Below are positions 1 through 55,128 of a stretch of 64,000 nt of DNA, piece by piece. The notes below the pieces were generated by a model. It had not been told where the DNA came from. It ran no database searches and was given only the letters and a program-made list of their open reading frames with translations. The position numbers were made by a program, and so were the translations under genes. Location: NCBI GenBank assembly GCA_965285935.1, contig OZ260664.1, positions 85,994,001-86,058,000 on the forward strand, read 5' to 3'. Every line of letters starts with the position of its first letter. Position 1 is the stretch's first letter. The stretch comes from Ophelia neglecta. Its lineage: Eukaryota.

Positions 1-3000
1 AGACCAGGTGACCTAATAAGCAACTGTCAAAGTCCCGTTGTTTAAAATTAAATGCATGATTGGCTCTGCGCTATTAGAAAAATTAAGCCGCTGTCTTGAG
101 CTTATATTGTTGTTGCATTTGTATTTAAACGATGGATTCAAGATGGACTCAAGAAATACTCGTAGTCCTATTTAACATTTCTTTAATTCCGGATAATACT
201 TGAACCGATGAAACATAGTGGATCCTTTGTGCAACTTGGCAGCTTAGGTGGTTTTTTTGGCGAATCTGAGTTGAACGTATGAAGCCAAGAGCAGGCACAT
301 GGATATGGAGACAAGTGCCACTTCATTTTTCCATAAATCCCAACTGGACCCGTAGTCGATTTCCTGATGGCGTAAGTATTCATTTCCTGCGTGAGCATTG
401 GGTTTGCTATAGAATAAATTATGATCAACGTAAATAAATTACTGATAGTATATTTAACCTAATAGTGAAACGTAACGTGGGTGGTGAAATCAACTTGATG
501 CAAGTTATATCAGAGAGGATGAACCCTGAATCAAATAATGTGTGGTCAATAATCCTTCACAAAACTATAAACTGTATTTAAAACTACATGGATAATAGTA
601 TATACAGCAAGTATATCGTAATGTCAACGATTTTCCTTAGCATAAACGTTTATGTATTACAACTTATCATTTTATGCACTGGTAATTTTCATCGGAGTTG
701 GAACCTGACTAATCACTGTTTTCTTACCATGAACATTTGACGCTTTTAATAGAAGTTTGATTCATATTGAGAGGCTACACTTACTTGCTGAGTAAACAAT
801 CATTTGACTAAAACCTGCCTGAAAGACCATCTATATTCAGACGGCTTGTGAATTCAACCATTAATACGAAAATTATCTTCCACCCTTTCAATGTTATATA
901 ATCTGTCGAAACAAACAACCTCCATAATCAGCAATTTGCAGTCCATCCGTTGCTTCCAAGTTTCAATTTATAATTTATAATAAGCATGTGTCCCCATGTA
1001 CACTTACCAATACGATGTTCCGTTTGTATAGTTACAAAACGCCAAGTTTTCCATTTCATTGATCAGGAGAGCCTGCAGAAAATGTGTTCATGTTATTACT
1101 TAAAAAGGTAAGGTATTCTGTATATATTCCCATAAACTATAACTTGTTACGGAGAACAGTATCACCATCTGTACGTAAATCATGTAATTTTTTTTTACTT
1201 TTTACGGCATGAATTGAACCCAATACACGGATGTTAGGTGGTAAAACACGGTAATTTTCAAAAAAGGGAGTAAATAGCGTACTTATTAATTAGTAATAGT
1301 TTATTCAGAAGGTCATTTAGTTCTATTTCGCAATTGTTCCCATAAGAAAACATTATGGTATACGCGATTACACATGGGAATGTGAAGATAAATATATCTG
1401 AGAGGGTTGTCCTATTGTAGCCTTTCATATATTTTCAAACTTACGTTAATGCTGTATCTGAAAATACTGATATATGACACCAATCGAATCCACCATCCTA
1501 CTGAAGACAGTTTGACGAGTGTTCCACCAAATACCTGAATGTGGACGGATATTCTATATATTTGGCTAAGGCACTCTACAGTTTATCATTACATTATGTT
1601 TTCTATTACCAACTTATAACCTTTAACAAATCCATCGAAACTTATAAATGACTGAAAGAGGATATGGAGGAAGAATTACTCAAGGATATGATATAAATCT
1701 GCAAGCAAAGACACATATAGAGCTTCAAGCCGCGTGTAGCGCTGTTTTAGAGCTAAATATATCCCTAATAGTAACGATATGAATGCAAACTGATTGCCAC
1801 CGGGATCATATCTGTACTAATAACGTAATTCGTGTGTTCCAAAAGCCTGAACCGGATCGGGACCCAAATTAGGGTAATTATAACATTGTGATTCTCGCGC
1901 CACAGCCGTATGCTGGTCTTTAATCAGGTTTCTCCAAACACTTTGTTTTAAAATGCATTTAATTATTAAGATAGTTAAAACCATAAAGCCAATATATAGC
2001 ATATTGACGTATAAAATTTGGTTTCAATACTTGGCAAACCATGGCATGACCCCGTCTTGACCATTTCATACTGTGCTTGCCTCTCTTGCCCCACAACGCA
2101 CTCACCATCATAAAAACGAATATCAGTGCCACCAGCAGATCGGCAATCTCAAACCGTTTGATTCTAGCGCTCACACAGAAACTAACCGACGAGGCTCCAA
2201 GAGTAGTCAAGAAAATGGTGAGAAAGTACACGAAGAACTTAGCTGCGTTCATTCGGAAACCTATGAATATTCAATTGCCACTTGTATTAAAAGCATGAAC
2301 GAACAGTTATAACAGATACTCAATTTATGTTGTTTGGTGTTTGGCGTAAACAACGCCAAGATATAGATTAAAAAAATTTACCTATCATGAAGTATGAGAT
2401 TAAAGAAAACAGTAAAGTTGGCTGCAGTCGCATCGGTATAATGTCGCATACAACTTTGGAAACGAAATATGCAAAACATCCATAAAAGCCAGCCGATTGT
2501 TCATGCCTAAATAATAAAAAAGTTGAACAAATTAATGAATGACTTGATTGAAAATTATGTGTTTGACTGACAAGAGTATTCACAGAAGTGATTACACATT
2601 ACAAAGTAAATCCAGGGAATCATACTTAAAGACAACTCGTTCCCGAATAAACACTCCTACCGCTGACAAGTTTTGAAAAGTCTCAGTCATAACGATGAAG
2701 AAGACGGCTCCAGCCCTTTAATAAAAATACTATCTAGTTAAAATAAACAACCTAACGTAATTATGAAGTATTTGGTCGAACGCAGGCATTTTGTGTCGGC
2801 TTTATGGCCACGATTGTTGTGAAAGTAGTCTTTTCCGGTAGCATTGATATCTCACCTATTTGGAATTCCATGTATTATGGTGTCGTCCAATTGAAAGTAA
2901 ATTCCCCCTGACAGCAGGGCAAACACAATAACAACACATAACTGAAAGTAATTCAATATACCACGTGAGAGCACCAATAAAACAGCCAGGGAGAATAATG

Positions 3001-4139
3001 ATGTATTAACAGGTAAAATAAAGAAAGTATAAAGGTTTTGGTTAGTAAGCTTTCTGACCTCATAACAATAAATACTGACCAATTTACTTAAAACCTTTGA
3101 GATGGCAAATAGCAGGAGCTAATATCACGGGTATGGTCCAGTAGGTAGTAAAAAGACTATATTAGAAAATAAAGTTGGAATCAGTAGCGAGATATTTCGA
3201 TCAGTCATCACAATTTGCTGATAGAGAACATTAAAAAACATAATATCTGTTGATCAATATCTTCTCAACTGCGGATTCCTTTTGTGTTAGGTCCAAAATA
3301 ATGGAAGATTCCTAATTATTGATTGCCGTGGTCTGCAGAAATAAATGTAGATCTTAAACTTGTAAAAACAAGTTCATACCTACTTTTTTGTATTTGCAAT
3401 ACACTGCAATAACCTATATCAAATAGATAATGGGTATCCCATAAATCGGTGCATTGGTCATGTGTCAGTTTTAAATACCAAGTAGCCAGGGGTAGAATGT
3501 TCATCTGTATAAAGGTTCTGCTTACCACAATAAGAAGTTAATTAATAGTGTGTACACACCTGTGTAATGTATGCTGAACGATTTCGGAAGATATTCTGTA
3601 AAATTCGCTTGGAAATATATTTGACCTAGAATGAGAAACGAAAGTCTATGGAAGGTGCCATGTGATAAGATTAAAAACACAATATAACACCATGAATTGT
3701 TATGGTACCAAATTTAAACGTTTTACACACAAGAAGTTATATTCCAACTGAAACATAGTGGGCCAATTTGAGTCCACACACCTGCGTGCCGAATGATTCT
3801 TTTTTCTGCCTTTTTCTGAGAACTTTCTCTTTCGATATTATTTCAGAGTTCTCAAAAATGCGATCCAACTGGTCTTTTTGCCTGTAGTACAATAAGAACG
3901 TTGATCTTTAACCTGTCTTCACTTTTAACTTCACTCGCTGAAAATTATATTTTCAGTTTACTATGTTCCCAGTCTCCCATGACTCTAGTCTATTCTGTCA
4001 GTTACACCTACCCCAGTTTTACAACAAACGTTTATAGAGCGCCCCAGCCTTGATATTCTAGTCCTTGAGAGTTCCGGTCAAGTATTTATTGTTTACTGCA
4101 TCCCTCGGTCTCACCCTACTAGTACGTATAGTCGCCGGA

Positions 4140-4388
4140 ATGATTTTTATACGAAAGGCCTGTTTCGGTCTTAACTCGTATCTCAGATTAAAATTGGATT
4201 TAAGTATTTATGATGTATTTACTTTCAAAGCAGGCTTTCTGGAAGCAGGATTTGGTCTTAAACCTAGCTATGCTAGTCTTAAACTTAGGCTTGGTCAATG
4301 GAAACACCGCTTAACGCCATCTCAGCTAATCGGTAATAGGCTAATATAATCCGCATACTTAAAACCACTTCAAGAAACTGGGCCCTGG
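4140..4388. mobile_element. Inverted, diverged copy of the 11746-11984 MITE-like element in an ABCG-A intron
   Basis: 4290-4350 (CTCAGCTAATCGGTAATAGGCT) is the near reverse complement of 11790-11812 (AGCCTGTTACCGATTAACTGAG). It ends with AAACTGGGCCCTGG. Confidence 0.6.
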
Positions 4389-7300
4389 AGTTTTGAGTAA
4401 GGTCGCGCAGTAGTCCCATACTACTGGTTAACAAGCACTGAGCTAGTTCATACCAAAATTGACATAATGGTTGTCTTGCCTGTAATACATTTGTGAGTTC
4501 TTGAAAGTTTCCTCCAGGGTGTCGGCAGTGTTGGCACGTTCGATTTCGCATGACCTTTCCAACTGCTTGTAGGCAGATATCGCCGGTATTTCCAGATTTA
4601 CTGCAGATGATGGTGAAGTTGGATAGGCTTCAGACTGACCTGATGGCAATATCAAATTCAAGAGTTTCAGGATATAATAATGGCACTTCTCAAGACGATC
4701 GTTCAAAACAACATCGGCTTGTCTTTCATTTTATGTTTCCCTTAAGACATGGGTTGCAAGATATAAAACAAGGATTACAGCATACATACCGGCAAATAAA
4801 TATAATTAAGCCGAAGCTATTATGCCATTTGATGTTGTAAATAATAGTGTTGCCCGATCCAACATTCTATATTATTCCTGAATTTATTTGATTAAAACGG
4901 ATCATTGACCATGCTTTAAATGCTTACCTCCGTTGTTACTATATTGTACTATTATGTCATGATGTAATTCTATTTATTAAATGTTAAACAATTGGATGCA
5001 ATATTCAACATTTATGGCTATATGACAAAGAAATGAAGATATTATTTAACTTTCGTTAGTAGTCTCCGTAACCATTTACTCATATCGCTTATCATAAACC
5101 AAAAAAAAATGTTGGTCTTCTTCTTACCCGCCCCGATTGCAGTCGCATTTGGCTTGTTAATGATGTCAAGATAAAAATCTGCCGGGTTGTCATGTTCCTC
5201 ACATTCATATCCTTTAAAAAAGAAACCAATACAATTCAAGATATATGCAATTTGGCCTTAACATTAACTTTATATACCTGCCCAAATTTAGTGCTTTGTA
5301 ATCATGGCAAAGTTAAGGCCGACCCTGTAACACTACTCCAGAAAACAGATAATTTCAAAGAGGGACATGATATAAAAACTGGGCATAAGGGTTCGGGATA
5401 ACCCATGAATATTTGCCCTTCTTTTGAAATTTCTCCTATCTTTTACAATTGAATTTTTTTGTTTAATGACCACTGGCGACTACACTAACTGTTGCGAGGG
5501 AGTATACCCACTGGTATGGGGGGGGGGGGGTCTACCCATATGTTGCATAGTTGGCTAAATCCCTACTTATGCATTGTCTTAGTATGAACAAAAACTATTC
5601 TTAGTCAAAGTAATCACATATCATGACACAAAAAGACACCAGTACGTAGCATGCACGCCTTCCGTAAAATAAAGGAATGTCTATGAATGTCTATATAATG
5701 TCTATATAATTAAACGTAATCATTAACTGAAAAAAATAGGCCAGGTAACGCATATTGTTTTTTCTTGGTTGAAAGTGGTAAACATGCCAAATTCATAATA
5801 TGTTTTGTAAATAAACAATAAGAAATATTAAGTCATATTTACCATTATCTTTGAAGTATGCTATGCTTTCATCTGCAGGCCCATGATATGTTAACTTTCC
5901 CATAGACAACAGTGTGATTTGATCAAATAATTTGAAGATGGAATAACGTGGTTGGTGGATAGAGAGAATGATCGTATGTCCAGCATTCGCTAGTCTGAAA
6001 TGAAAAATTGAAATATACCTTAAATAGGATAGATGCATATTTATATACAGGCTTAAAACTCGGACAGCCAAAAGAAACGATTTGTTCGTGGATGATGTGG
6101 CGGAATAAGCTAGAATAATTTTTTTTAGTAACAATTAGCCTGGAAGATGGTGGTACGGCACCTTTACAGTGTATGACTATAAAGAGCAAAGTTGCAACAT
6201 CCCTACGTCTTAAGTGTGTTAAGCAGATCGATGGCTGTGCTAGCATCCAGGCCCGTGGTAGGTTCGTCAAGAAATATCACTTTCGGAGAAATCACGAGCT
6301 CCATGCCGATGTTCGTTCGCTTCCTCTCTCCCCCAGACACTCCGCGAACGTCAATAGAACCCACCTGACGTGATATAAAATTGTTCATAACGCTTATGAA
6401 GCTAATACGAAAAGAAACTACATATATACATGTATATATACATATAAACTACATATAAATATATTGTTTTTTATTCAGTTGGCGAAGAATACAACATTAG
6501 GATTTAATATAAATCACTTTTCAGTCCACACCTAGGGCTACTGATTAGACTTGAAGGTGCGGAACAAGTAATATTTTTTGTTGGGAACTATGAAGCCTAC
6601 AACTGTCCATAGTGCAAGAACTTGGTTTCGGGTTCATTTTATTTTTACGGAAGTGGGTAAGGCTTGTTCAGGTATACTGCTGTGTCCAAATCTTATATAT
6701 ATTACTTCCACTATACTTCCAGCAACTCCGCCTTTCGTTAGAGTCCTAACTAAGCCAAACCCTAAGACTATAAGCTTGCATAATATTGATTATATACATC
6801 ATATATATGCATTATAATTTGTATATATGCAGTGGTATTAGTGAAGAGTAGTGCTTGGCCTGAGTATATCTAAAGAGCATATTAATAATATCATCATATT
6901 AGTAAACCCCGATTATATTGATACATCAACGGTTTTCGGTTTTAATGATTCTTACTTTACCTTGGTGTCTTTGCAATTTCTTAATCCCAGGTCATGAAGA
7001 GTTTTTTTCACCAGTTCGTTTTTCTTTGGTTTTGATATATCTGGTCCTAGTCGTAGATTTGCAGAAAATGCTAAGTTTTCCTTCACCGTCAAGGTTTCAT
7101 AAAGGAAATCATCCTAAAAACGAGAAGTTTGGATGCCACAGATGCACATTAGTTTCTTTGCATTGCGTTATTTGCCTTAGTAATGCTTTTAAACCAAACA
7201 TATCTGTCGATTCTCATATCTAATTGAAGGTGAATTTCTCACCTGCACAACATATCCAATGCGACGTCGAAAATAATCTGCACGAGGTTTTCCATCAACC

Positions 7301-7422
7301 AATATTGTGCCCTTCTGTCCACTTGGGTGCTTTCGACCCGCAATAATGTCAAGTAGCCTGTTAAATTTAATAAAAGTCGATGAAAAAACTTGTTTACAAA
7401 AATCCTAAATGGCCAATGAAAC

Positions 7423-7425
<3 letters not shown>

Positions 7426-7476
<51 letters not shown>

Positions 7477-7478
7477 TA
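7426..7478. repeat. (TA)n microsatellite in an ABCG-A intron
   Basis: TATATA run of about 40 nt with an imperfect extension. Confidence 0.95.
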
Positions 7479-9129
7479 ATACTTCCCTTAACAATTTGCA
7501 GTTATCAAGAGTAGGATTTTGAGGGCCCTGGAGGCATATCCTGTTTAATTTTGGGAGCATAAGGGAAGGTACATAATCCTTATGCTCTGGCTTTAACCTT
7601 GAATAAGCTAAATTGTTATTTTTTATTAATTTACTCAATAGCTTATTGTCATAACTTACGACGTCTTTCCGCATCCCGTTGGCCCCAGAATCGCATTCAA
7701 ACCACATGGAAACCTGCAGCTACAAATCAGATGGAAAAGAAGAAAATTAGAATGCAATGGGATTTGAATCCATCAAGAGTAGTATTCGACGCCAGGACAA
7801 GTGGAAAAAACCGCATGAAAACCCAAAAACCCGTACGTGTTTTTAAAGCAATAGAATTTCATTTGTTTTCAATTTCAGTGTTTCATCGCCACAAACATAG
7901 TTATTATAATACAAACTGTCTATATCAGTTAGGGTTTGACAACATGTGCTTTATTTGCACTCATTAGTTTAGACAAAATAAAGGAAATATTAATATTATT
8001 TCCTCCCTCTATGTTCAGCGACGTTTAAATTTCATTTCCGCTGGATAATAAGCATTACAATGCACAGTTCCAATCGTTTACCCAGCCCCGTGCATGTTTT
8101 GTTTCAAACAACAAGTACTTTGTCAGGTCGATAACAGACTTATTCTTTGCTTGAGTCTAAGGTTACACGCCGCATCTACATATTTTATCATCCAATGTTA
8201 ATGCTAAACATCCTTAGGGTTAACCGCCCGTTAAAAAAATAAGGGCAAATACAAACCAATGTTTTGGTAGGAAATCGGTGTAAATGATGATGGATTGGGT
8301 ATGCATTTCCATACCATTAAGTTCAATATACCCATCACTCAATAATATTTTCACGTGCACCCTATGTATCAAATACCTCTGAATATTGTAAGTGCCTACC
8401 TGATATTTTCCAATATCATTTTCCTCGATTTATTCTTGCCAATTTCATATGACACGTCATGTAATGTAACTTCAGCCCCTATCGCCTCCGTGTCTTTGTG
8501 CGAAGGTGTAGCAGTCTGTATCGTCTCGGAGTATTTTTCCTGAAACAATGCCGTCTCTTCATGTGGGACCTCTTCTCCGGGAGTAGCCCCATCAAAGTGC
8601 GTCTCCGTGACTCCACGCTACATTCATCTCCTGGCAAAGCCTTAGTGTCTTCTTGTGAAGTTACTTCAGTCTCTTCGTCTACTGTCACAGGAACTTCAGC
8701 CTCGTTCGTCTCTATGGTTTGTCCCGTGGTAACTTCGATGCTTTTCGTCTCCAAGTCTTGCCCCGGAGAAAGTGCAAAGCCTTTAGTCTCCATATTGTGT
8801 CCTTTTATAACTTTTACATCAACAGTCTACGTGTCTTGGCTCACTGGCAATTCGTCGAGCGATGATGCATCGAGGCTAACAACTAGTTTATTTCAATAAC
8901 CAGCGTGACAGGGTGTCACACAAAAACTTCCCTTGGCTTGGTATGTATTATACCAGGACAAACATAGAGGTTATGCGAGGGTAGAGCCCAAAGTTTAAAA
9001 TGGCCGTAGCTTAACGACTTTTTACCAGGACGGCCATAGACTAGCCCACAATATGAACGAGCTTCTGAGATGCCATCACATGTTAAAACAATAATGTACA
9101 ATACAATTTAGAGTGGAGTAACACGATTT

Positions 9130-10420
9130 CAGACAAATACACCCTGGTCTTATACTTCAAAATTCAAATAGACTCCACTGTCTTCAAATCTGCAGGGAGA
9201 TTATTCCAAAGCCGACATCCCTGGTACGAAATGTGATCTGACCAGTTTTACCCCTACACCTAGGAAGTACCAAATCAATTAAACTACTGCTTGCTACATA
9301 TAGGTGCCTCTGTCTTAACTTATTGAAAACAGTTGATGGGTTAAGAGGGACAATATCATTCAAACACTTAAACAAGAACCAATGTGAGATGATTCACTCT
9401 GCTGTTAATTTTTAGCCAAGACCTGTGCACCATCAAGCTGGGAACCAGGCGATTGGTCCAAACCAAAACTAATAGCCTTGTTCTGATGTCTAGTGCGTAC
9501 ATATTGAGTCAATCCATAATACCAAAATTTACATTCATAATCAATGAATAGTTGCGTAAGAAAAGAACACAAAAGTTTTCTAATGACTTGATTAAGAAAA
9601 GGCTTTTTTTCCAAACAAAACTATCTGCAAGTTCTTTACAACTTGCATATCCATGAGCTCTGTCTTTAGGTTACAATCAAGAAGTCCTCCCAGATAGTTT
9701 GGAGTTGTCTGAAATTTTATGTATACACCATTCCAAATAATGTTGAAACTGACCGTTTTACCTAATTTTCTTTTCCTTACAAAATATATGCATACCGAGA
9801 TGCAGTGACAATTTGTTTTTAACTAGCCGACTGCTAATCAAATTCAATTCTGACGTTCAAGTGGCTTCAGTTTCAGCTATATCCTTCACCACCAGGGCAG
9901 AGTCCTCAGCAAACAATACAATAAACCAATTACCTGATGATACCATATCATTCACGTACACCAAGAAACGACTAGAATAGAGCTTCCAGGTACCCCAAAC
10001 TATTTTACCCCTGATCTAGTGCCAGATACATCAACACACAGTTTGACAACACAAGTAAGTACGAAATCACTGTTTACAATGGTCCTCTGCTCCAATCGCC
10101 GTTGATTTACTAATCCTTACGTTGTGTTTGACTGCTTCAAAGGCCTTTGGAGGTTCCCATCGAAGTTCCCATTTTGATTCCATGTTTGTAAATTTATGTT
10201 TTGCCGTATTTAGTAATACGTAAGTCAATGTTATTCCACATTATATCATATGTTATTGCTAGACTGTTTCTCGTACTCAAAACATGGCTTATGTTATTGC
10301 AATGGCACGTGGAACATGGGTTTTTCAGACTGGACTTAAATGCAGACATGCATAGTTGACTCTGCCCGAGGATCGCTGAAAATACGTCTATTGTGTCAAT
10401 ATTGGCCACATAATAAAATT
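9130..10420 (-). mobile_element. Degenerate non-LTR (LINE, CR1/L2-group-like) reverse transcriptase fragment
   Basis: Broken minus-strand frames give GVPGSSIL...FLVYVNDM (about 9945-9996; cf. GVPQGSILGPLLFLIYVND), LFAEDSAL (about 9893-9916; cf. YADD) and RKLLCSFLTQLFIDY, typical of the post-RT region. Many stops and frameshifts. Confidence 0.75.
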
Positions 10421-11745: not shown

Positions 11746-11984
11746 CTGGGCCCGATTTCTAGAAGCCATCTTGCGTTTAACGATTTAATAAGCCTGTTAC
11801 CGATTAACTGAGACCGCTTTTTTCGTGTTTTCATTAACCAGGAAAGTTAAGAACAAAATGGCTAAGGTCAAGACCAAATTCACGTCCCAAAAATCCCGAT
11901 TAGCAAGTTAAGAATAATTTAGAACTTGAATCCTGATTTTAGTCCGAGTTAACAAGTAAGACACTTTCTTGAGACTGGGCCCTG
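11746..11984. mobile_element. MITE-like element (GGGCCC-type inverted ends)
   Basis: Ends CTGGGCCCGATTTCTAGAAG ... CTTGAGACTGGGCCCTGG are imperfect inverted repeats. The interior matches 4140-4388 in reverse complement. Confidence 0.65.
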
Positions 11985-37251: not shown

Positions 37252-37479
37252 GTTACCGAGATGAGCTATATAGAGGCATATAGCGAAGAACTAATCATTT
37301 CTCCAATTCACAGGGCGCCTCAGAAACAAATGTACCCTTGTATATACCCAAAAATTGGGAATAGTATCGCCACCGGGAACACAATCTTGAAGATCCACAA
37401 ATGTTTGATTTGCGATCGCAACGCAAACTGGTCAACCAATGGCAATCTGTAGCAGTATGAGCACTATGAATGGTAGTCC

Positions 37480-44600: not shown

Positions 44601-47600
44601 ATTGTATCCGAGTGATTTCTTTACCAAATGGCTGTACATTCAGAATGCCTTTATTTCAGCCAATTTTTAAAGCAAATTCATTGACACGGTTTGCGATTGA
44701 GGCCTCCCAAAACGTTGGCCGAATTTTCAGCTTCATGGTCACAGCGATATCTCCGAAATTGAAGGCCTTCACGGACAATATCTCGGCTGCTATTCTTAAA
44801 ATATGAACGCTCGCATCTCGACTGTTCATTATCTAGCCCAATCATGTGTGTAGGTGTTGACACGTTTTTCATAACTTACCATCGCCAACTTGGAGTAGTA
44901 TTGCAGTATGGAATTGTCTACACACAGTGAGTTAATGTTACGTCATGACAAGTAGTGCAGGATCGGATCGTTTATACACCAGAATGCACTGGTTAACATT
45001 ACCTCGGGAAACCCCTTTATAATGTTATGTATCATATCAATTGAACATACATAATGAACACATTCTTAAGGCAGTATTTCTTCGTTATATTAGTACGCAT
45101 TAGAACTTGTCTTGGTAATTCAATAATATAGGTTGTAGATTTTGCCTTGTAAAAAACACTTTCTCTTCGATTTTAATTATTTACAAGTGCTTTTTAAATT
45201 AAATTAGTTTTTGCTTTTGAAGGCAGATGACCATGGCCAATTTCACTTGGACTCAATTTTCCTGCTCAAGTTCTAAGACAACATATCATGTTTGTTGTTT
45301 CTTTTGTGGTGTGCTAATTTCTGGTATTTTATTACTTTTCACCCGGGCCTCTTGAGTGATGTATTTGGCCCTTTGGCTGGTATCTCCCGATGCTGTAAGA
45401 ACTGTTAGACGGGCGGTGCTTCATTTATGATTTTGCGTTGTCAGCCGGGTATCCACTAAGGTCTTTTTTTCATCCTGATAATACTTACCTACTTTAGATT
45501 TCATCTAAAAATACTATGCATGAAAGATTAAGAATACCATATCACATAACAGATGGGAGCTGAGTCTTTGTGTGTTTATGTGTGTTGAAGCGAGGGGTGT
45601 CTTGTAAAAAGCCTTTTTGTTATGTTTCCTTTTCTTCGCAAAAGTATGTATGAATTGTTTATCTTTTAATTGGGATCAGTCTATTCCAAAATCGCCTATG
45701 TGTTCTTGTATTATTTAGAGAAAGAGAACACGGTTTGTGAGAAGGTGCTGATTCTGCCGAAAGGTGTTCATTTTCATTGAATATAGCTACCTTCAAAGAC
45801 AATGCTAATTTAAAACCACATAATACATATTTGACATTAATATTTAAAACACTAAACGTCTACATAAAACCGGATTCGGAGTTCCTTTTCATTATTGAAC
45901 CATATAAAAAGTAGTATGCTTATATTTCAGGACAAATGAATAATGATAAGGCGGGCCTGTCCGAGAGAGATTTGTCAGAGGTGTCCAGTTATACCAGTAC
46001 CGGAATCGCTCGGAGTATGCTGTCCAACCGAGTGTCTTACACCTACAATCTACAAGGCCCTTCTATGACTCTGGACACGGCCTGCTCGGCGGGACTCGTG
46101 GCGGTCCATCAGGGCATCCGCTCTATCTTGTCAGGTAAGATACATTTTGCGGGTTAGGGTATGCACTAACATCGATGTATTCAATAACAAAACTCCCTTT
46201 TAAAAAAGAAACTAAAATCTGACCTGTGTGCTAACCAGCTGGTATGTGTATATATCTGTAATGATTTTACCACGCCGGAAATATATCTTAATTGCTTAAG
46301 AGTTGATAAATTTACACTGATGCAACCTTCATCTCGATTTGGCACAGATACCTCCTTGGTAAATAGTTATATAGGCGTTTTCTACAAGAAAAATTCCGAC
46401 CATGAAATAGAACCAAATAAAATACAATATTGATACGGCTGCTTTCTGCCAAATAGCGCCATGTTTCGTTGAATTTTTTTCCAATTATATGAAGGTTACG
46501 TAACAACTCCATGGGGGCCACTGGACCATGTACACCTAAATAATCGAGTTTTTAGAAATCCAAAATATCGAGTTATTAGTTCGCAATGGTGTGCTTATAT
46601 AGATATCGTAATTTCGAGTGAAAAATGTCCCTTGATAACCTATTAGGTTCCCGTGTACTCTCGCACAAGAAATTACCTTTTAATCCAACGCGACCAAGTG
46701 GTTACCCTACGGCTGTCTGAATCAAACTATACTAAACATGTATTTCAATAAAAAATACATGCCGCCATACCTTGTTTCGGGAATTATAACCATTTTTAAT
46801 CAACCAGGTTCGTATTATGTATAAAGTGGTAATGTCCAAGTAAGATAACAAAACATAATGCATTGACATATATGAATTATAAAATGAGTTCTTTAAGCGC
46901 CCTATGCAATATCTACCAGCCAGATAATTAGGGTATGCTATCGCTGTTATCGCTGAGAGGAGACAAAGTTAAAGTGTTGGAATCCGCATTATAATAGTTG
47001 TACTAAACTTGACACCTAACACATTTTATTTGATTTGATCATTTCCAGGCGAATGCTGTGTATCAATATGTGGAGGTATTAGCCTCATACTCTCCCCATC
47101 ACCATTTGTAGGCCTAAGTAAGGCCCGCATGTCTTCAGAGACCGGAACATGTCACGCCTTCTCTGACAAGGCCGATGGTTACGCCAGAGGTGAAGGGAGC
47201 GGTGTTCTCGTGCTCAAATCAGTCAAACAGGTGGATTATTTACTGTGATACTTAGAGATATACAAGGTCCCAACGTATTAAAATGAGCACTTTTTTCCAT
47301 TTATTCTAAAGGTACATTTAAAGTAGTTCTGACTATTTTAAGGCCAAAGAAGACGGTGATTACATATGGGGTTTCATTGCATCAGCGGTCAACCAGGACG
47401 GCCACACTGTCACACCGATCACTGCACCAAGTGTTACCATGCAGGAGAAATTACTAAGAGAGCTGTATGGAAAAATACAACTCGAACCTGAGGTGGTTCA
47501 ATATGTGGAAGCACACGGTAGGCTACTTCACGCGAAGGGGCAGTATGGTGGTCTCAGGAGAAAGAAAAACGTTGCTAAAGTTGTCGTAAAAATATGTCAT

Positions 47601-50600
47601 ATTATCACATTCTGGCGGGGCACATACGCCGATACATGTCCAGCTCCCTTTACCAGTGTATAATTCTTGTTTGGTTGTGTGTAATGTCAATTGCTACCAT
47701 TATTTCCTTAAAAAGGGAAGTGTTATTCAAGTGCCATTTTATAGCAAATATCCGTCAAATATAGAATTGATATATAAAGATAAAAAAGCATCGGCAGCCG
47801 AAGTCAGAAATCAATTAGCGGGTGCCGTCACGCAAGCTTATTGTGAAAGCAAACTCCATTAAGAGGCACAATAGATTAATGCACAGCACCATTCCAGCCT
47901 TTTTGATTAGCATGGGGCCAGTTTTAGCCCCCTTGCTGCTGCGGAACATTTTGAATTACATTTTATCACTATTTGTAAGTAGTGTTTTCGTTGCCGGATC
48001 TTTCGACATATCAAAGCACAGCATTACAATTATCGTTTTGGTGTGTCTGTGAAAGTAAAGAAATATATAAATTGATCCTCAGAAATCTCGGTGAAGATGG
48101 CCCGTGCACGGTAGGTTTAGTCACTCCTATTTTCAAGGAAATTTGGTCTTAACATTGATTTTTGTTTACTTGTTTTCAATAATTAACGGATTTCTGCGGT
48201 AAACTATAGAACCTATATTCAAATGCGTGACCAAAAAACACTACTTTCATAGGTAAAACAAGGACCCATGGAAAGTACGTCCTATTGTTCGACCCATGTT
48301 TCCGTGAATCTACATTAAATGTAGTATCCTATCGATTGAAAGTGTTCAGATACTTGTTCTTTAAAATGACATTTGTTTTATTTTCCAGGGACTGGAACAC
48401 GCGCAGGCGACCCGGTAGAAGTCGGAAGTCTGGGCCGTGTTATCGGCGCCGCCCATGACAAGAAAGATCCCTGTTGGATAGGTTCTGTAAAAACCAATAT
48501 CGGTCATACAGAATCAGCGGCCGGTATTGCTGGAACAATCAAAGTTTTGCTGATGATGAGGCATGGTAAGATCGTTCCGTCTTTACACTTTGATGTGCCC
48601 AACCCGAACATTGACTGGAATTCGTCAAACCTTGCGGTACCTACGTCGGTGATGCCTTGGCAAGTAAACCCGCAGGGATTACGCATCGCTGGCATAAATT
48701 CTTTTGGTTTCGGTGGAACAAATGCGCACGCTATTCTGGTGCAAGAAGAACATTTTCCTAAAACCAGCGGTCTGGGCGATAAAGGTAATCATGACCTGAA
48801 CATAGTTACAATTTCGGGAAAGTGTCAAAATGCTTTAACACAATCTATGGCTGACCTTCTCGCTGCCATCAAATCAGGGCAAATTCAAAACAATGTTCTT
48901 TCTCTGAGCTTCACTTCAACTGCTCGACGAAGCCATTTCCGCTTTAGAAGAGCATTTACTGTTCACGACACGTTAGAACTTGCAGCGCAGTTAGAAAAGA
49001 AGGCAGAAATGCCGACCCATACTTCTTTTAGCAAAGAAAATTCCATTGTTTTTGTTTTCGGTGGCATGGGCACTCACTGGTCTGGGATGGGAATGCAACT
49101 CATTCAATGTGAGAGGGTTTTCCGTGAGAAAATGGAAGAGATTGATTCCATTATACAGCAGTGCGAAGGTTGGGGGCTCCTTAGTGCAATACAGACTGGT
49201 AGCGATCTGTCTGACCCAACCGTAGGTCAGCCAGCTATCTTTGCTATTCAGGTTTCTTTGGCCACTCTTTGGAGGTCTTGGGATGTCCTTCCCCGTGCTG
49301 TAATTGGCCTCTCCGTTGGAGAAGTTGCCGCAGCTCACATTGCGGGTAAACTTAACCTCTCCGATGCAGTCAAGGTGATCTGTACTAGAGGCAAGCTCCT
49401 CAGCCAAGTAACTGGTGGATCCATGCTTGTCATCGGGAACATGGAAGTTTCCGCTGTCAAATTGTACATTAGTCAGTTTGGTGGCACGGTTGAAATAGGT
49501 GCACAAAATAGTCCAATAACCTGCACCATATCTGGCGATGAAAAACAAATTGATGCAATCCACAACGAGCTGAATTCTTTGAAAGCGACAGAAAACCCTC
49601 GCTTGTTTCTCAGAAAACTTCCGGTCAATATCGCCTTCCATAGCCATTTTATTGATTCGATTGTACAGCCTTTAGGAGAACAACTCGCACAGCTATCCGA
49701 AGCACATCTTGAGAATTCCACCGACATCATCTCATCAGTCTCTGGTAAAAAGGCAAGTACTGGGGATTTCACTACAGCACACTATTGGCAAAAGAATGCT
49801 CGACAAGGGGCAGTGTTCTTTCAAGGGATACAAACACTTTCAAAAATGGTTAAGAGTCCTATTTTCATCGAGATTAGCCCTAAACCTGCTTTAGGACGCA
49901 ACATCACTGAAACTCTTAACGGTCATCCGCCTTTGATAGTCCCATCGATGAAAGAGAATGAAGAATCGAGTACGATTATAAAATCGCTGGCCGCGATTTA
50001 TGCAAGTGGGGTAAACATTGCATGGAAGTCATTTTGGGGTAATGTCAAAGCGGAAATATCAACTTTCCCTCGATATCAATACCAGAGAAAGAGACTGTAT
50101 AACGAAACTAAATCCGTTACAAAATGGCGATTGGGACAAAATGGATCAGATTGTCACAGTACACGTGAACATGATACTGGCTTTCTTGTGCCAGAGGGGG
50201 AGGGTTGGCTCTGTCTGATTAACAAAGAAACAACGCCTTTTGTTTACGACCATCGACGCACCGGGAAGCCATTAGTTCCCGCTGCAATGTATGCCGAGAT
50301 CGGTTTGTCAGCATGTATTGCTACTTTGCAAAACAAGACCCATTTGAAAAACAGCACCACAAATGTATCACTAGTTAACGCACTTCACCTAAATCAGGAA
50401 GATGCAGAATCCAAAATCCATGTTTTAGCTGACCAACAACCTGAGATGCCATGCAATTACTTGCGGTTCTTTATTAAAGGAGGCTCAATGCTGCTGGCAG
50501 AAGGTGATGTTCAGTTTCTCCAAGAAGAAGATACTGGTGATATATTTGACATTGAAGCCATCAAAGTAAGATGTGCTGAGTACTTTGAAGCTGAACACTT

Positions 50601-53600
50601 ATATGACCTACTGGAAACGCACAAATACACATATGGTAAACGTATGCGAGCTGTGGAAGAAGGTGTCAAAAACAAGACTGAGTGCTTGACAAAAATTGTC
50701 CTCCCTAAGGACGTCCATCATGAGAGGAGGGGTGTTATCATTCATCCAGCCATTTTGGACTCCTGCTTTCAACTGGTCGCCTTGCTGATTTCCCAGGACG
50801 CTCGGAAGTCCCTGGCTGTTCCAGTCGCGCTCCATGGACTGAAAGTACTAGGTGACCCTATGAATGCAAAATGGATTTACATGAAGGTTATTTTTAAAAC
50901 TAAATCCCAGTCAGAGTTTTCTGCGCATATCCTAGATATCAATGGCCATGAGCTTGCAAAAGCTAGTCGCATTATCATTAAATCTATCGATGAGGTTTTG
51001 CTGCAGAATCCGTCTGAACTGCGTTACATGCAAGGTTGGATACTAACGAAACGTGACGTAAAAAAGGACCAGACTAATGATTATATAGATGAATCAGCCA
51101 AGAACACTAACATATGCCATATCTATGCCAACAGTGAGTTGAACCGAGATGTGACCACATCGTTAACAGGGCAAGGGGCTTGCGTAACGCCGATTGCATG
51201 TCGTAATATCACAAGTGACATTGAGAAATGCTTCATAGAAGTTAGTCCAAAGGCCATTTTGTTTTCCATGGCTATACGCCCACAAGCTGCCACTCAGTTC
51301 ACTGAATCTGACCTGGCAGTGTCCGAGGAATGTTGCTGGTGTCTCATGAACATTTTAAAGTATTGTTTGAAACGCAAATACATCCTACCAGTATTTGTAC
51401 TGACCAAGCACGTTTATTTGCGACAAGACCAGGCACCTTGGGCTCAGCTGCATGATTTACCACAACTGAATGCCAACTCGAGTCTGATAGGCTCCGCACT
51501 GTGGGGTTTGGCCAGAACCGCTGTTCGTGAGGGTCTCCGAGTCATCTGTATTGACATGATTCGCTGTAACCTAGAAGAAATCAACAAAGTTTCTTCTCTG
51601 GTAATGAGCGACACAATGCCTTACCCTGAGTGGGTTCTCGCTGATTATTATTCATACAGAAATGAGTTTCTACCCTACATGGGACCACCCGCTCACAACC
51701 ATAGAGTCATACCCATGCGACATGACGATGTTGTACGGATTGTGTCTAAAACTAGTCATGGGAGTATAACAGTTCAACAAGATGTTGTGGAACTAAAGCA
51801 GGAAGACACACATGGACATGTTAAAGTAGTTAGTGCCAGACTCCATGATAACAGCTGGTTTCCTTCTTACTGGAATGACAATCCTCATGACGCGTGCACC
51901 ATTAATGACGAGGCTCAGACCATATTGGCTTTGGATTACACGGCAAAGATGTTGAATCCTGATAGGCAAGGCGAATTTTTCGGCTGTCAGCCCATACCAC
52001 TCGTGGAAGTGGCTCATGTAGATAGCAGAACGCTAGTTCCTGTATCGTTGCTCCCCAGCGACCAGCCAATGCTTTCCCTCTGGCTTGTTTCTTGGGATGT
52101 TTTACACAAACACGCCGCCGGAATTAATCATATTCGGGTTCACAACCTGGCTAACTGGCATATTCTGGAAAACTGCATTAAGTCTGTTGCACAAGCTCTG
52201 ACCGTTAGCGTTGAAGAAGACACGTCTGTTATTGTACCATTAGCAATAGTCTTCGCATGTAAGAACATGGCGCCCAAAGCGTTACATTCCATATTGCAAA
52301 CCTCGGAAAAGGCAATAGTTATAACATCAGATGCCAATTTGAGAGTTGTCTGTGGATCATTAATGGACGAAGGGCATTTTAGAAATGTAACTTTCTACAA
52401 CCATGTAGATTTATTTGTGCCCCATCAATTGGTTGAGCTGGTCCCAAATTTCAAAGCGTGGCTGATAAAATGCCCCCTTCCCAAAATTCCACTGCAATGC
52501 AAAGTCATTAAGCCAAAGCCAAACGAACTGCGAGAAGGCTTTGTTATTAATGGAATAAAAAACCAAGGGAACAACATTGTTATGGAATTACCACAGAGAG
52601 ACATTAGTACAATTCCAAGAATTACTTACCAAACACAAACTCTGTTCAGATCAAACGGTTGTTACATTTTGGTGGGTGCCAACAAAGGGCAGGGGTTAGC
52701 ATTTCTAAAGCAAATGGCCGCACTTGGCGCTGGTGTTCTGATTGCTTTGTCACGAACTCCACCTACGAAGGCAGTATTTGAAGAATATGAGCTCATGTCA
52801 AAAGAAAACAATGTTCAAATTCATTGGGTTCAAACCGACGCTACAGACAAGAACAGTCTCATTGAGGCATTCGTCACCATTGACAGGCTGCGCGGAAAAT
52901 GCCCTATAAGAGGGATATTCCAAGGAGCTGTAGTTCTCGCTGATGCGTTGGTGCAGAACTTAACATACGAACAATTTGTCTATGCTTACAGGGTTAAAGT
53001 GCATGGCACATTTTACCTCCACTCTCTTACACAAGATATGGAATTGGATTACTTCGTGTTGCATTCATCCATCACTGCTATATTAGGGAACATAGGACAG
53101 ACAGCGTATGGGGCTGCAAATGAATTTATGAATTGTTTTGCTAGTTACCGGCGGTCCATTGGTCTCCCTGGCCAAAGCATCAATTGGTCGCCTCTTAAGT
53201 ATGGGGTTATTCAGTGGAATACAGCTGCAAAGCGCCATTTAATGTCTGTTGGCATTGTTCCTTTAGAGAATGATGAAGTGTGGTATTGCATGAAACATGC
53301 CTTGCTAGGCGATCTTACATACGTGACCTATGGCAAATTTGACCTGGAAAAGTTGATAACTAAGGGTCACCAGGAAGCCTTTGGTATTTCAAGTAGACTG
53401 ATATTTCTTGCCACAACTGCCTCTCTAAAAAGGAACGATCCCATAGACTCGCAAATTATGCCTATCAATCTGTCCAAAATGGCTTCTGAAGCACAAGCGT
53501 CCAAATCAAAATCACAGTGTTATATTGAAGACATTATATCTGAACAGTTGTCAATCAGTTCACAAGAACTTGCTGGTAGCCACGCATTACCATTGGCCGA

Positions 53601-55128
53601 TTTGGGATTCAATTCAATGGATGCGGTATATGTTGCTAGTAAAATTCAGCAAGATTTCAACATCCACATTGATACCGATGGAAACTCTAGTATCGATAGT
53701 ATGACAACTGATTTGTGGTCTAAGTTTGAAGGTTTGCAGACAGAGTCAACTGATGCTAAACCGTTTGGGCCATTTGAACAGCGAATATTGCAACTTGTTC
53801 AGAACTCGACCATGTATCGCCGTCACATGTCAAGCTTCTTGACGTTAGAGATTACAAACTGTTTTTTGAGCCCAGACTCCTTGGTAGATATGATGAAGGG
53901 CATCATTGAAAAGCTACCACATTTGAGGACTTCCACCAGAATTAACCATGAAGGCCGAGTTACCTTGATCAGGAGAAGTGTAGACAGTATTAACGTTCAA
54001 GCTGCGAGCGTAACAACTATATCCTTGGCTAAGATGCGAAACCATCTTATTTTTCTTGCAAACGATCTCAACGTCTCGACGGAAACACCTTTTAAAGTCC
54101 AGGTTCATAACAGTTATGACAATCACCAGAGTATGTTCCTGGGAATGGTGTTTCACCGGGTTGTGGATGATTGCCACACAATTCACCAGATCTTGAGTTT
54201 ACTGATCAACGCCATGCAGCGCAAACCCCAACCTCTACCATTATACATGGTCAAGGAAGATGCTTATCGAATCCAGGAAATAGTTGCTGAAAGATATTCA
54301 GAAAACTTTTGGCGCCACGTCCTTCCAGATATGTATGAGATGGTTAAAATGCCGCAATGCTTTTTCCATTCATCTGATAATAGTGAGAAATTTGACGGTA
54401 GCATGTTCAAAGTGCTGCTTGATGGTCGCAGCCATGAAAGCGCGTTAGATGCCTCAATGACTGCAGAAGTCAGCTTGAATCAGTATGTGTTGGCTTTGTT
54501 CCAGCTGTACATTCATTTCTGTTCTGACGCAAAAGTTGTTATAGTTGAAATGACTATTGATATGCGTGAAATTTTACCTAAGGATTTCCGCGATTACTCC
54601 GGAAACTTGGACAACGAACTGCTTGTTGTTTCAACAATTGATCCCTCTATTAATTGTCAAACAAGACTATTGCAGGAACAGGTAATTGAACAGTGCAAAC
54701 ATATTCAAAAATGTGTCCAACATGGACTTTTCCCAACCCAATCAATGCTTGATATGATCAAATTTCCAGGCAGTAATTCAGGTAAATCGGTCCAATTCGC
54801 CTTTGAGTATCGCCAAGGCCACGAAACATGCGATGCAACTGAACTAATGGACATGGCTGTGAGAGTGGTGGAAATTATACCTTCCTCTTTTGGAAAACAA
54901 ACTCTGAAGTTGTATGTTGTTGAGAACAAGTCAGCTAAACAGCTTGAGCTTTATCTATTATCTGGCCCAGGCTATTTTTCAGAGTATGGTGTCAAAGCCT
55001 TTGCCACAGGTTTCCAGGCATTTTTAAATAACTGCTCGCTAAGTATGCAGCGTCCACTCAAAGAATTCAGTGTAGCTGTGGAGAAAGAACATGGAGGTGT
55101 TTTGACAGTGACAACTGACACCATTTAA
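41698..55128 (+). CDS. Type I iterative-type polyketide synthase copy B, KS-AT-DH-psiKR-degenerate ER-KR-ACP-C (intact, 2556 aa)
   Basis: Exons 41698-41906, 44308-44468, 45931-46134, 47049-47230, 47343-47517, 48389-55128; total 7671 nt, open. KS triad: DTACS, EAHGTGT, KTNIGHTE. AT: GLSVG (49306-49320), conserved Arg and IAFHS. DH: HRRTGKPLVP (50251-50280) and HPAILDSCFQ. KR: GANKGQG, VLAD, GQTAYGAAN. ACP: GFNS (53605-53616). C-like tail: HLRTS, FHRVVDD (54151-54171), FWR, GNLDNEL, HGLFP. Confidence 0.95.
43675..44150. repeat. 37-bp minisatellite, about 12-13 diverged units, in the first coding-region intron of PKS-B
   Basis: A unit like CTATAGCCTATGGTACTATAACGCGTTTATTCCTGAC repeats head-to-tail with no unique spacers. 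Confidence 0.92.
53760..55100 (+). other. C-terminal condensation-like domain of PKS-B (counterpart in PKS-A at about 22975-24290)
   Basis: About 440 aa after the ACP, with ordered NRPS C-domain-like motifs: KLPHLRTS (cf. RHxxLRT), PFKVQV (cf. PLFR), FHRVVDD (cf. HHxxxDG), FWR, ALFQLYIH, IDMR...GNLDNEL (cf. R...GxFvN), HGLFP (cf. HQxxP). No GxSxG thioesterase motif seen. Confidence 0.8.

What the first reader, a model, noticed from the sequence alone, without database searches (positions are those of the whole stretch)
244..55128. Duplicated head-to-head PKS + ABCG2 exporter cassette: candidate animal biosynthetic gene cluster
Seen: the same two-gene unit (ABCG on -, PKS on +, start codons 5.2 kb and 4.4 kb apart) occurs twice. 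The paralogous KS and core ABCG exons have identical sizes, but the introns do not align by eye, so the duplication is not recent and the pairing was retained. Known: synthase-plus-exporter clusters are standard in bacteria and fungi but rarely described in animals, and ABCG2-family pumps export hydrophobic, pigment-like small molecules. Inference: this is a co-regulated make-and-export module for a polyketide such as a pigment, defence compound or biomineralisation signal.
Basis: partly seen in the sequence, partly recalled or inferred. Interest (0 to 1): 0.93.

Follow-up and report, generated by a model that had tools for sequence, protein, structure and literature searches.

The report
Amplified animal PKS–ABCG2 gene pairs
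An invertebrate-type animal chromosome carries at least ten back-to-back pairs of a polyketide synthase gene and an ABCG2-type pump gene that were copied and kept together, which makes a candidate "make it and pump it out" module, but no expression or chemistry data exist and one of the two pairs in this window looks broken.

Summary
The window holds two divergently arranged pairs, each an ABCG2-type half-transporter on the minus strand and a KS-AT-DH-KR-ACP-C polyketide synthase on the plus strand. The start codons lie 5,182 and 4,447 bases apart.

- **Age of the two pairs:** A and B have dS of about 1.0 for both genes, so they were copied as one unit. dN/dS is 0.18-0.24, which indicates purifying selection.
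- **Recent triplication:** the A+B block is one of three ~120-kb tandem units that are 94-97% identical.
- **Older pairs:** four more pairs lie elsewhere on the same chromosome.
- **Pump ancestry:** all 11 PKS-linked ABCG copies form one clade (100% bootstrap), apart from three unlinked ABCG2-like loci.
- **State of the copies:** pair B is intact in all three units. In this window pair A is damaged: PKS-A has two in-frame TAA codons and ABCG-A has a 4-base deletion. These lesions rest on the assembly alone.

The "co-regulated make-and-export module" reading stays an inference. No RNA run was found, the two spacers share no conserved sequence, and distant PKS relatives have no ABCG neighbour. 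The nearest precedent is co-expression of pks1 and abcg11 in sea-urchin pigment cells. The scan had also noted the neighbouring unit (s1-740729).

Verdict: a new variant of a known kind, of moderate to high interest.

The parts
244..8793 (-). ABCG-A: ABCG2-type half-transporter, 16 coding blocks, stop codon at 244-246. The open reading frame from the ATG at 8793 is broken in exon 1.
   Evidence: Blocks are co-linear with ABCG-B. Walker A, signature, Walker B and H-loop motifs are present. A splice chain with open frames exists. Copy A1 upstream has the same exon 1 intact.
8611..8612 (-). Site of a 4-nt deletion in ABCG-A exon 1, relative to copies A1 and A2. It shifts the frame between the ATG (8793) and the conserved NBD start.
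   Evidence: Three-copy alignment. It rests on the assembly only.
8794..13974 (.). Spacer A between the two divergent start codons (5,181 nt); the presumed shared control region.
   Evidence: No ORF of note. No similarity to spacer B beyond chance.
13975..24305 (+). PKS-A: six exons (13975-14183, 15067-15227, 15512-15715, 16701-16882, 17008-17182, 17587-24305). Domains KS-AT-DH-KR-ACP-C.
   Evidence: It is 72% (AT region) to 55% (C domain) identical to PKS-B.
14083..14085 (+). In-frame TAA at codon 37 of PKS-A. A1 and A2 read Lys; B reads GAA.
   Evidence: The read check was inconclusive.
19335..19337 (+). In-frame TAA between the AT and DH domains of PKS-A. A1 and A2 read Leu; B reads TTG.
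   Evidence: The read check was inconclusive.
26122..37251 (-). ABCG-B: intact ABCG2-type half-transporter. ATG at 37251, stop codon at 26122-26124, 16 coding blocks.
   Evidence: Pfam per exon. PDB best match is ABCG2. Intact in all three units.
37252..41697 (.). Spacer B between the divergent start codons (4,446 nt).
41698..55128 (+). PKS-B: intact gene of six exons (41698-41906, 44308-44468, 45931-46134, 47049-47230, 47343-47517, 48389-55128). The exon lengths sum to 2,556 codons.
   Evidence: Intact in all three units.
41698..48594 (+). KS domain of PKS-B, spread over exons 1-5 and the start of exon 6. Active-site Cys (DTACSAG) and both His (EAHGTGT, NIGHTE) are present.
   Evidence: Pfam ketoacyl-synt positions 2-250 and Ketoacyl-synt_C positions 6-119 are co-linear over the exons. 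Motifs.
49048..49995 (+). AT domain. Active-site GLSVGE, and an IAFHS motif of the malonyl type as in fatty acid synthase.
   Evidence: Pfam Acyl_transf_1, E = 4e-52. Motifs. The specificity is inferred from general knowledge.
50218..50937 (+). DH domain, with HxxxGxxxxP and DxxxQ motifs.
50938..52656 (+). 573-residue stretch between DH and KR with no Pfam match. It is probably a structural KR half plus a degenerate enoyl reductase.
   Evidence: No family at E <= 1. The language-model neighbours are ADH_N/ADH_zinc_N and SpnB_Rossmann clusters, scores 0.82-0.89, which is a lead only.
52657..53196 (+). KR domain, with a GxxxGxG nucleotide motif and catalytic Ser and Tyr (YGAAN).
   Evidence: Pfam KR, E = 1e-44. 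Motifs.
53521..53676 (+). ACP. The attachment serine sits in GFNSM.
   Evidence: Pfam PP-binding. Motif.
53866..55089 (+). C-terminal condensation-like domain. Its motif is FHRVVDD (54151-54171) in place of HHxxxDG.
   Evidence: Pfam Condensation, E = 1.8e-11. A PDB profile hit to an NRPS C domain (E = 0.0017) aligns the motif. No relative was found among 1.84 billion representatives.

Best explanation
This is a lineage-specific two-gene module that has been copied many times. Each unit has an iterative type I polyketide synthase (KS-AT-DH-[degenerate ER and structural KR]-KR-ACP-C) and an ABCG2-type half-transporter. The two genes are transcribed away from each other across a 4.4-5.2 kb spacer.

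Shown:
- The pair arose once.
- The pair was copied as a unit, repeatedly.
- Both genes were kept under purifying selection.

Inferred:
- The synthase builds an unbranched, largely unsaturated chain from malonyl units. KR and DH look active, the ER looks degenerate, and there is no methyltransferase.
- The C-terminal condensation-like domain releases the chain onto an alcohol or amine.
- The ABCG homodimer moves this hydrophobic product out of the cytosol, across the plasma membrane or into a granule.
- The two genes share the spacer as a control region.

In this window pair B is the working candidate. Pair A is a decaying extra copy.
For: Pairing and co-duplication:
- Ten of the twelve PKS genes of this family on contig C7 have an ABCG2-type gene upstream on the opposite strand. 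ABCG exon 2 lies 5-16 kb from the PKS ATG.
- The 11 linked ABCG copies form one clade with 100% bootstrap, against the unlinked ABCG2-like loci on C1, C8 and C9.
- The coarse grouping agrees with the PKS identities: {A, B, 93.9 Mb} against {16.85, 17.24, 17.47 Mb}.
- dS between A and B is 1.0-1.05 for the PKS and 1.04 for the ABCG, so the two genes duplicated together. dN/dS is 0.24 and 0.18.

Condition of the copies:
- Pair B is intact in all three recent units, and pair A is intact in unit 1.
- In units 2 and 3 both A genes carry independent lesions. The two genes therefore seem to lose constraint together.

Motifs and gene structure:
- Catalytic motifs of KS, AT, DH, KR, ACP and the C domain are present.
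- The gene structure, with introns only in the KS part, and the C-terminal C domain match the canonical mollusc PKS clade (PMC10764717).

Precedent:
- In sea urchin, abcg11 is expressed only in pks1-positive pigment cells (PMC7455242).
Against: - No expression data exist. No RNA run holds the stretch.
- The A and B spacers share no conserved sequence.
- Segmental duplication copies neighbours whether or not they work together, so co-duplication alone does not prove coupling.
- Two family members have no ABCG nearby: the PKS at 95.91 Mb, which looks full length, and the PKS at 90.42 Mb, which is truncated.
- PKS relatives in Pecten, Mizuhopecten, Glandiceps and Owenia have no ABCG exon within 10 kb.
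- No tailoring enzyme gene was found in the 120-kb unit.
- The product and the role of the C domain are inferred from motifs only.
- dN/dS between A2 and A3 is 0.28, which is low for long-dead genes.
Confidence: 0.5

Rival explanations
1. Linkage by descent only. An ABCG2-type xenobiotic pump happened to lie next to a PKS gene in a region prone to segmental duplication. Both were copied together, and each is kept for its own unrelated job.
For: All pairs lie on one chromosome and descend from one ancestral pair. Recent copies are whole 120-kb blocks that also carry an Ig/FN3 gene and LINEs. The spacers share no conserved element. Orphan PKS genes exist.
Against: The pair stayed intact and divergent through at least four rounds of old duplication (dS about 1 or more), with purifying selection on both genes. 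No linked ABCG stands without its PKS in the searches made. Both A genes decay together in units 2 and 3.
Confidence: 0.3
2. The pair is functionally coupled, but the pump is not an exporter of the end product. It may protect the producing cell, load a precursor or the acceptor molecule into an organelle, or flip a lipid-anchored product within a membrane.
For: ABCG family members do all of these (general knowledge). The sea-urchin abcg11 precedent is described as a homologue of the pigment-precursor transporter white (PMC7455242).
Against: The exons match ABCG2 far better than ABCG1, which is the human kin of white: E = 7.5e-17 against 1.4e-7. Nothing here tells the transport direction or the substrate.
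Confidence: 0.12
3. Part of the copy number is an assembly artefact. Units 2 and 3 (dS 0.025-0.034) could be two haplotypes laid in tandem, and the lesions of pair A could be consensus errors.
For: Contigs of three runs of one sample show only the sense letter at both TAA sites. At 40 variant places they show only letters of paralogue A2 or A1.
Against: The units differ by a LINE insertion and many indels. One contig carries a letter private to unit 3, at 16558. Three different kinds of lesion fall in the two A pairs and none in the three B pairs. This rival would change the count of recent copies only. It would not change the A/B pair or the four old pairs.
Confidence: 0.08

Closest known systems
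Sea-urchin pigment-cell battery: Pks1 with Abcg11 (Perillo et al. 2020, PMC7455242; PMC11574130)
   Same: An animal type I PKS and an ABCG half-transporter are used in the same polyketide-producing cells. Abcg11 is expressed only in gcm- and pks1-positive cells.
   Different: That case rests on co-expression, and the papers read here do not report linkage. The transporter there is called a white homologue. Here the link is genomic (divergent pairs, amplified), the pump is ABCG2-like, and expression is unknown.
Canonical mollusc PKS clade with a C-terminal condensation domain (Lin et al. 2024, PMC10764717)
   Same: A single module ending in a C domain, with few introns, all at the N-terminus. 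This matches the five small KS exons plus one 6.7-kb exon seen here.
   Different: That paper reports up to nine KS genes per species and no transporter neighbour. Here at least 12 genes of one family lie on one chromosome, and 10 are paired with a pump. Sequence identity to any database PKS is only about 27-36%.
Fungal and bacterial polyketide gene clusters with an ABC or MFS exporter
   Same: A synthase and an efflux pump sit side by side, often divergently transcribed. The logic is to make a hydrophobic product and remove it from the cell.
   Different: Microbial clusters usually add tailoring enzymes and a regulator, and they are single copy. Here there are two genes only, both with animal introns, and the unit is amplified tenfold.
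Human ABCG2 (BCRP)
   Same: The order is NBD, then a six-helix membrane domain. It is the best solved-structure match for NBD, membrane and C-terminal exons. Both have about 16 coding exons.
   Different: The A type has an acidic N-terminal extension of about 95 residues. The Walker A reads GPTGCGKT. The substrates are unknown.
Mycobacterial PpsE and PapA5-type release by a condensation-fold domain (from general knowledge, not tested here)
   Same: A PKS carrier domain is followed by, or served by, a condensation-fold acyltransferase that off-loads the chain onto an alcohol or amine instead of a thioesterase.
   Different: There is no detectable sequence kinship beyond the Pfam family. The motif is FHxVVDD, not HHxxxDG.
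Animal biosynthetic gene clusters or 'bundles' (Kim et al. 2026, PMC12833800)
   Same: Animal-encoded specialised-metabolism genes are grouped on a chromosome.
   Different: Those bundles hold several enzymes with intervening genes. [quoted passage not shown] A synthase-plus-pump pair is not described there.

Membership tests
ABCG2-type half-transporter (ABCG subfamily) | Nucleotide-binding domain precedes the membrane domain in one polypeptide. | tested here: met
   Per-exon Pfam: ABC_tran in exon 5, ABC2_membrane_7 in exon 6, and ABC2_membrane positions 53-203 co-linear over exons 11-14.
ABCG2-type half-transporter (ABCG subfamily) | Intact Walker A, Q-loop, signature, Walker B and H-loop. 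| tested here: met
   GPTGCGKT, YVVQ, VSGGERKR, IFLDEPTTGLD and SIHQPR are present in A and B.
ABCG2-type half-transporter (ABCG subfamily) | Closer to ABCG2 than to ABCG1/4 or ABCG5/8. | tested here: met
   Exon 6 matches ABCG2 at E = 7.5e-17, against ABCG5 at 7.5e-8 and ABCG1 at 1.4e-7. The membrane and C-terminal exons hit ABCG2 only. There is no tree with named orthologues, because the joined protein was not searched.
ABCG2-type half-transporter (ABCG subfamily) | Homodimeric, ATP-driven efflux of hydrophobic substrates. | not testable with these tools
   Needs protein work.
Iterative type I PKS (canonical animal/mollusc PKS clade) | KS, AT and ACP in one module with catalytic Cys-His-His, the AT serine and the ACP serine. 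| tested here: met
   Pfam. Motifs DTACSAG, EAHGTGT, NIGHTE, GLSVGE and GFNSM.
Iterative type I PKS (canonical animal/mollusc PKS clade) | Introns few and confined to the N-terminal KS part; C-terminal condensation domain in one subtype (PMC10764717). | tested here: met
   Five small exons and one 6.7-kb exon. Condensation at E = 1.8e-11.
Iterative type I PKS (canonical animal/mollusc PKS clade) | Phylogenetic placement of the KS inside that clade. | not tested
   Only similarity lists are available. The best full-length matches are 26-30% identical, from animals with the same architecture: Glandiceps, Pecten and Mizuhopecten.
Condensation-domain superfamily | HHxxxDG motif with the catalytic second His. 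| tested here: inconclusive
   The motif reads FHRVVDD in B and FHSVVDD in A. The second His and the Asp are kept, while the first His and the Gly are replaced. It aligns to HHIISDG of an NRPS.
Condensation-domain superfamily | Two-lobed chloramphenicol-acetyltransferase-like fold. | tested here: inconclusive
   AlphaFold2 with five paralogues gave mean pLDDT 31, so no fold search was made.
Biosynthetic gene cluster | Neighbouring genes that act in one pathway and are co-regulated. | not testable with these tools
   Adjacency, co-duplication and joint decay are shown. The pathway link and co-expression are not, because there is no RNA run.
Biosynthetic gene cluster | Linkage conserved in relatives. 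| tested here: inconclusive
   Linkage is conserved among 10 paralogous pairs within the genome. It is absent within 10 kb in four distant species whose PKS genes are not orthologues. No close relative was available.

The most novel reading that the evidence does not exclude
Animals have repeatedly built minimal two-gene "synthase plus lipid pump" modules. Here a PKS and an ABCG2-type pump were joined once, selected as a unit and amplified to about ten copies, perhaps for high output of a secreted polyene-like pigment or defence compound. Independently, a related PKS sits head-to-head with a Patched/sterol-sensing transporter in an annelid and in a hemichordate. If so, head-to-head transporter genes would be a general way to find the products and the secretory route of orphan animal PKSs.
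Probability: 0.3. Interest if true: 0.8.

Novelty: new variant of a known kind. Interest (0 to 1): 0.62.

Why it matters
Most animal polyketide synthases have no known product, and animal biosynthetic clusters are few. Here a synthase and a pump were kept together through many duplications. That gives a testable handle: express PKS-B, find the compound, and ask whether ABCG-B moves it. The array of near-identical and older copies, some intact and some decaying in pairs, is also a natural experiment on whether the two genes depend on each other. If the link holds, neighbouring transporters could be used to mine other animal genomes for secreted polyketides.

Tried and rejected
- **Read check of the two TAA codons.** The contigs of the three runs come from one sample. 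They read the sense letter at both sites. All 40 differing letters match paralogue A2 or A1, so these contigs come from paralogues. The check is inconclusive. Only one letter private to unit 3 (16558) is seen in the contigs.
- **Structure of the C domain.** phmmer against 1.84 billion representatives gave no relative. The AlphaFold2 alignment therefore held only five paralogues and gave pLDDT 31. No fold search was run on it.
- **Conserved elements in the spacers.** None beyond chance.
- **Tailoring enzymes.** None among ORFs of 55 aa or more at 55-64 kb of the window, or among ORFs of 110 aa or more in the 200 kb upstream. Small exons could be missed.
- **Synteny in relatives.** No close relative of the PKS is in the protein collection; the best matches are 26-36% identical. 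Two look-ups came back withheld.
- **More genome DNA.** The old PKS paralogues could therefore be compared only by identity tables, not by a tree.
- **Bacterial, fungal or contaminant origin.** Rejected: spliceosomal introns, animal ABCG2 exon structure, and the same base composition as the flanks.
- **"Stops inside" flags.** These were flagged for the copies at 17.469, 17.481 and 95.918 Mb. I do not read them as lesions, because my queries ran into intron or past the natural stop.
- **Complex prediction.** Not used, because the report does not claim that the two proteins bind.
- **Joined spliced proteins.** Every exon was searched by reference, so no full-length ABCG search or named-orthologue tree was made.

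Full report
**What is in the window.**
The window (G000 contig C7, 85,994,001-86,058,000, about 36-44% G+C, no N) holds four genes in two like units.
- Minus strand: ABCG-A at 244-8793 and ABCG-B at 26122-37251.
- Plus strand: PKS-A at 13975-24305 and PKS-B at 41698-55128.

A six-frame comparison of the two halves gives 16 co-linear ABCG blocks and all PKS exons. The divergent start codons are 5,182 nt (A) and 4,447 nt (B) apart.

Each PKS has five small exons of 209, 161, 204, 182 and 175 nt, identical in size in A and B, and one exon of about 6.7 kb. The exon lengths of PKS-B sum to 2,556 codons. Pfam places ketoacyl-synt positions 2-250 and Ketoacyl-synt_C positions 6-119 co-linearly over the exons. 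These are followed by AT, DH, KR, ACP and a Condensation domain.

The ABCG exons carry ABC_tran and then ABC2_membrane in order, with all nucleotide-binding motifs. They match human ABCG2 far better than ABCG1, ABCG5 or ABCG8. Splice chains with open frames exist for both ABCG copies.

**Age of the duplication.**
A and B align only in coding sequence (about 72% DNA identity). Their introns and spacers do not align.
- PKS large exon: dS about 1.0-1.05, dN/dS 0.24.
- 532 ABCG codons: dS 1.04, dN/dS 0.18.

The equal dS values mean the two genes were copied in one event. The low ratios mean both paralogues of both genes were kept under purifying selection.

**The window is part of a larger array.**
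Searches of the whole assembly and 200 kb of fetched upstream DNA show three tandem units of about 120 kb. The A+B block of the window is unit 3. The units lie at 85.750-85.807, 85.870-85.932 and 85.994-86.049 Mb. They are 94-97% identical, introns and spacers included.

dS among the A copies is 0.034-0.065, and among the B copies 0.025-0.054. The branching order is (1,(2,3)) for both. Besides the four genes, each unit holds an Ig/FN3 gene, LINE elements and a UNC-93-like exon. I found no tailoring enzyme.

Four older pairs lie on the same contig:

| ABCG (strand) | PKS start (strand) |
|---|---|
| 16.85 Mb (-) | 16.864 Mb (+) |
| 17.24 Mb (+) | 17.228 Mb (-) |
| 17.468 and 17.477 Mb (+, two copies) | 17.463 Mb (-) |
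| 93.91 Mb (-) | 93.928 Mb (+) |

In every case the two genes point away from each other, with 5-16 kb between ABCG exon 2 and the PKS ATG.

Two PKS genes of the family have no ABCG exon nearby in three independent exon searches. One is at 95.906 Mb and has a full-length large exon. The other is at 90.42 Mb and is truncated before the C domain.

**One origin of the pair.**
I computed distances over per-exon alignments of ABCG exons 2-6 (210 columns). A neighbour-joining tree puts the 11 PKS-linked copies in one clade with 100% bootstrap. The unlinked ABCG2-like loci on C1, C8 and C9 fall outside it.

Within that clade, {A, B, 93.9 Mb} group together (71%) and 16.85/17.24 are sisters (100%). 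This agrees with the PKS identities. A, B, 93.9 and 95.9 are about 70-72% alike in the AT region. The copies at 16.88, 17.21, 17.45 and 90.42 Mb are 62-68% alike to A and B, and the first three of these are 43-44% alike to B3 in the C domain. The PKS side therefore rests on identity tables, not on a tree.

**Condition of the copies.**
- Pair B is intact in all conserved blocks in all three units.
- Pair A is intact in unit 1. ABCG-A1 has an acidic N-terminal extension of about 95 residues that is read from the ATG.
- In the window (unit 3), PKS-A has TAA at 14083-14085, where A1 and A2 read Lys. It has a second TAA at 19335-19337, where A1 and A2 read Leu.
- ABCG-A in the window lacks 4 nt at 8611/8612, which breaks the frame from the ATG.
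- In unit 2, ABCG-A has a 22-nt and a 2-nt deletion, and PKS-A has its exon-5 donor changed from GT to TT.

The lesions differ between units 2 and 3, so they arose independently. In each unit both partners are hit. This fits joint release from constraint, but the sample is small. dN/dS between A2 and A3 is still 0.28.

The lesions rest on the assembly. The only independent data are contigs of three runs of one sample. These read the sense letter at both TAA sites. All 40 of their differing letters are those of paralogue A2 or A1, so they do not speak for unit 3. Only one letter private to unit 3 (16558) is seen in them.

**What the synthase may make (inferred).**
- KS Cys-His-His, the AT serine, the DH motifs (HxxxGxxxxP and DxxxQ), the KR nucleotide motif with Ser and Tyr, and the ACP serine are all present.
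- The AT carries an xAFHS motif of the malonyl, fatty-acid-synthase kind (general knowledge).
- The 573 residues between DH and KR match no Pfam family, even at E <= 1. A language-model search places them near enoyl-reductase (ADH_N/ADH_zinc_N) and structural-KR clusters at 0.82-0.89, which is a lead only. No methyltransferase is seen.
- This suggests an unbranched chain that keeps its double bonds.
- The C-terminal domain is a very divergent member of the condensation family. Pfam gives E = 1.8e-11. A profile hit to an NRPS C domain (E = 0.0017) aligns FHSVVDD with HHIISDG. phmmer finds no relative among 1.84 billion representatives.
- There is no thioesterase, so release by transfer to an alcohol or amine is the likely role of this domain.
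- An AlphaFold2 model from five paralogues was useless (pLDDT 31).

**Is it a make-and-export module?**

For:
- A single origin for the pair.
- Repeated co-duplication.
- Purifying selection on both genes.
- A constant divergent layout.
- Joint decay of both A genes in units 2 and 3.
- The sea-urchin precedent, in which abcg11 is expressed only in pks1-positive pigment cells (PMC7455242, PMC11574130).

Against, or missing:
- No RNA run holds the stretch.
- The spacers share no conserved sequence.
- Two PKS genes of the family are orphans.
- PKS relatives in Pecten, Mizuhopecten, Glandiceps and Owenia have no ABCG exon within 10 kb. These are only 26-30% identical, so they are not orthologues.
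- Segmental duplication copies neighbours regardless of function.

I put functional coupling at about one half.

**Comparison with what is known.**
Lin et al. 2024 (PMC10764717) describe the canonical mollusc PKS clade, with or without a C domain and with introns only at the N-terminus. The genes here fit that description.

Kim et al. [quoted passage not shown] Full-text searches for an animal PKS with ABCG2 or an ABC transporter found no report of such a pair.

I therefore file it as a new variant of a known kind. The parts are known (an animal PKS and an ABCG2-type pump) and so is the logic (a synthase next to an exporter). What has not been described for animals is the arrangement and its amplification.

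**Noticed in passing.**
The related PKS genes of Glandiceps talaboti and Owenia fusiformis each have a Patched/sterol-sensing gene head-to-head directly upstream. The two Patched-like proteins are 31-52% identical. The window's genome has such genes only far from its PKS loci. The pairing of an animal PKS with a lipid-type transporter may therefore have arisen more than once.

**Verdict.**
Interest is 0.62.

Noticed in passing
L002:1943-5571 (-) next to PKS 10001-26768 (+); L004:1298-4580 (-) next to PKS 10001-22626 (+): In the hemichordate Glandiceps talaboti and the annelid Owenia fusiformis, a related PKS has a Patched/sterol-sensing-domain gene head-to-head directly upstream. Glandiceps has a second one downstream. 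The two Patched-like proteins are 31-52% identical. This may be a second, independent or ancient, pairing of a PKS with a lipid transporter.
   Followed up: partly
G000:C7:85750001-85950000 (L005-L024): Two further ~120-kb units of the same A+B block lie upstream, 94-97% identical to the window including introns. Each unit also holds an Ig/FN3 gene on the minus strand, LINE RT/endonuclease ORFs and a UNC-93-like exon.
   Followed up: yes
L018:2815-6177 (+): A 1,121-aa LINE ORF (endonuclease plus reverse transcriptase) is inserted in the ABCG-A2/PKS-A2 spacer of unit 2. It is absent from the window's spacer A.
   Followed up: partly
G000:C7:95906402-95919677 (+) and C7:90419408-90427899 (-): Two PKS genes of the same family have no ABCG exon nearby. 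The first has a full-length large exon. The second is truncated before the C domain. A C-domain fragment lies at 95878185-95878799 (-).
   Followed up: partly
G000:C7:16.85-16.88 Mb and 17.21-17.24 Mb: Two PKS/ABCG pairs are in mirror orientation, and their ABCG NBD exons are 97% identical. This looks like an inverted segmental duplication about 360 kb apart.
   Followed up: no
window:43671-44073: A degenerate tandem array with a 37-nt unit (about 9.5 copies) lies in intron 1 of PKS-B. A (TA)27 run lies at 7426-7478 in an ABCG-A intron.
   Followed up: no
window:53602-55125 (+): The last 508 residues of PKS-B pass Pfam's Condensation threshold but have no phmmer relative among 1.84 billion representative proteins. 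The domain evolves fast even among paralogues (43-57% identity).
   Followed up: yes
window:13900-19899: At 40 places the public contigs of the sample show only the letter of paralogue A2 or A1, and no contig shows the window's own letter. The cause may be bubble popping or an under-represented unit 3. It is not explained.
   Followed up: partly
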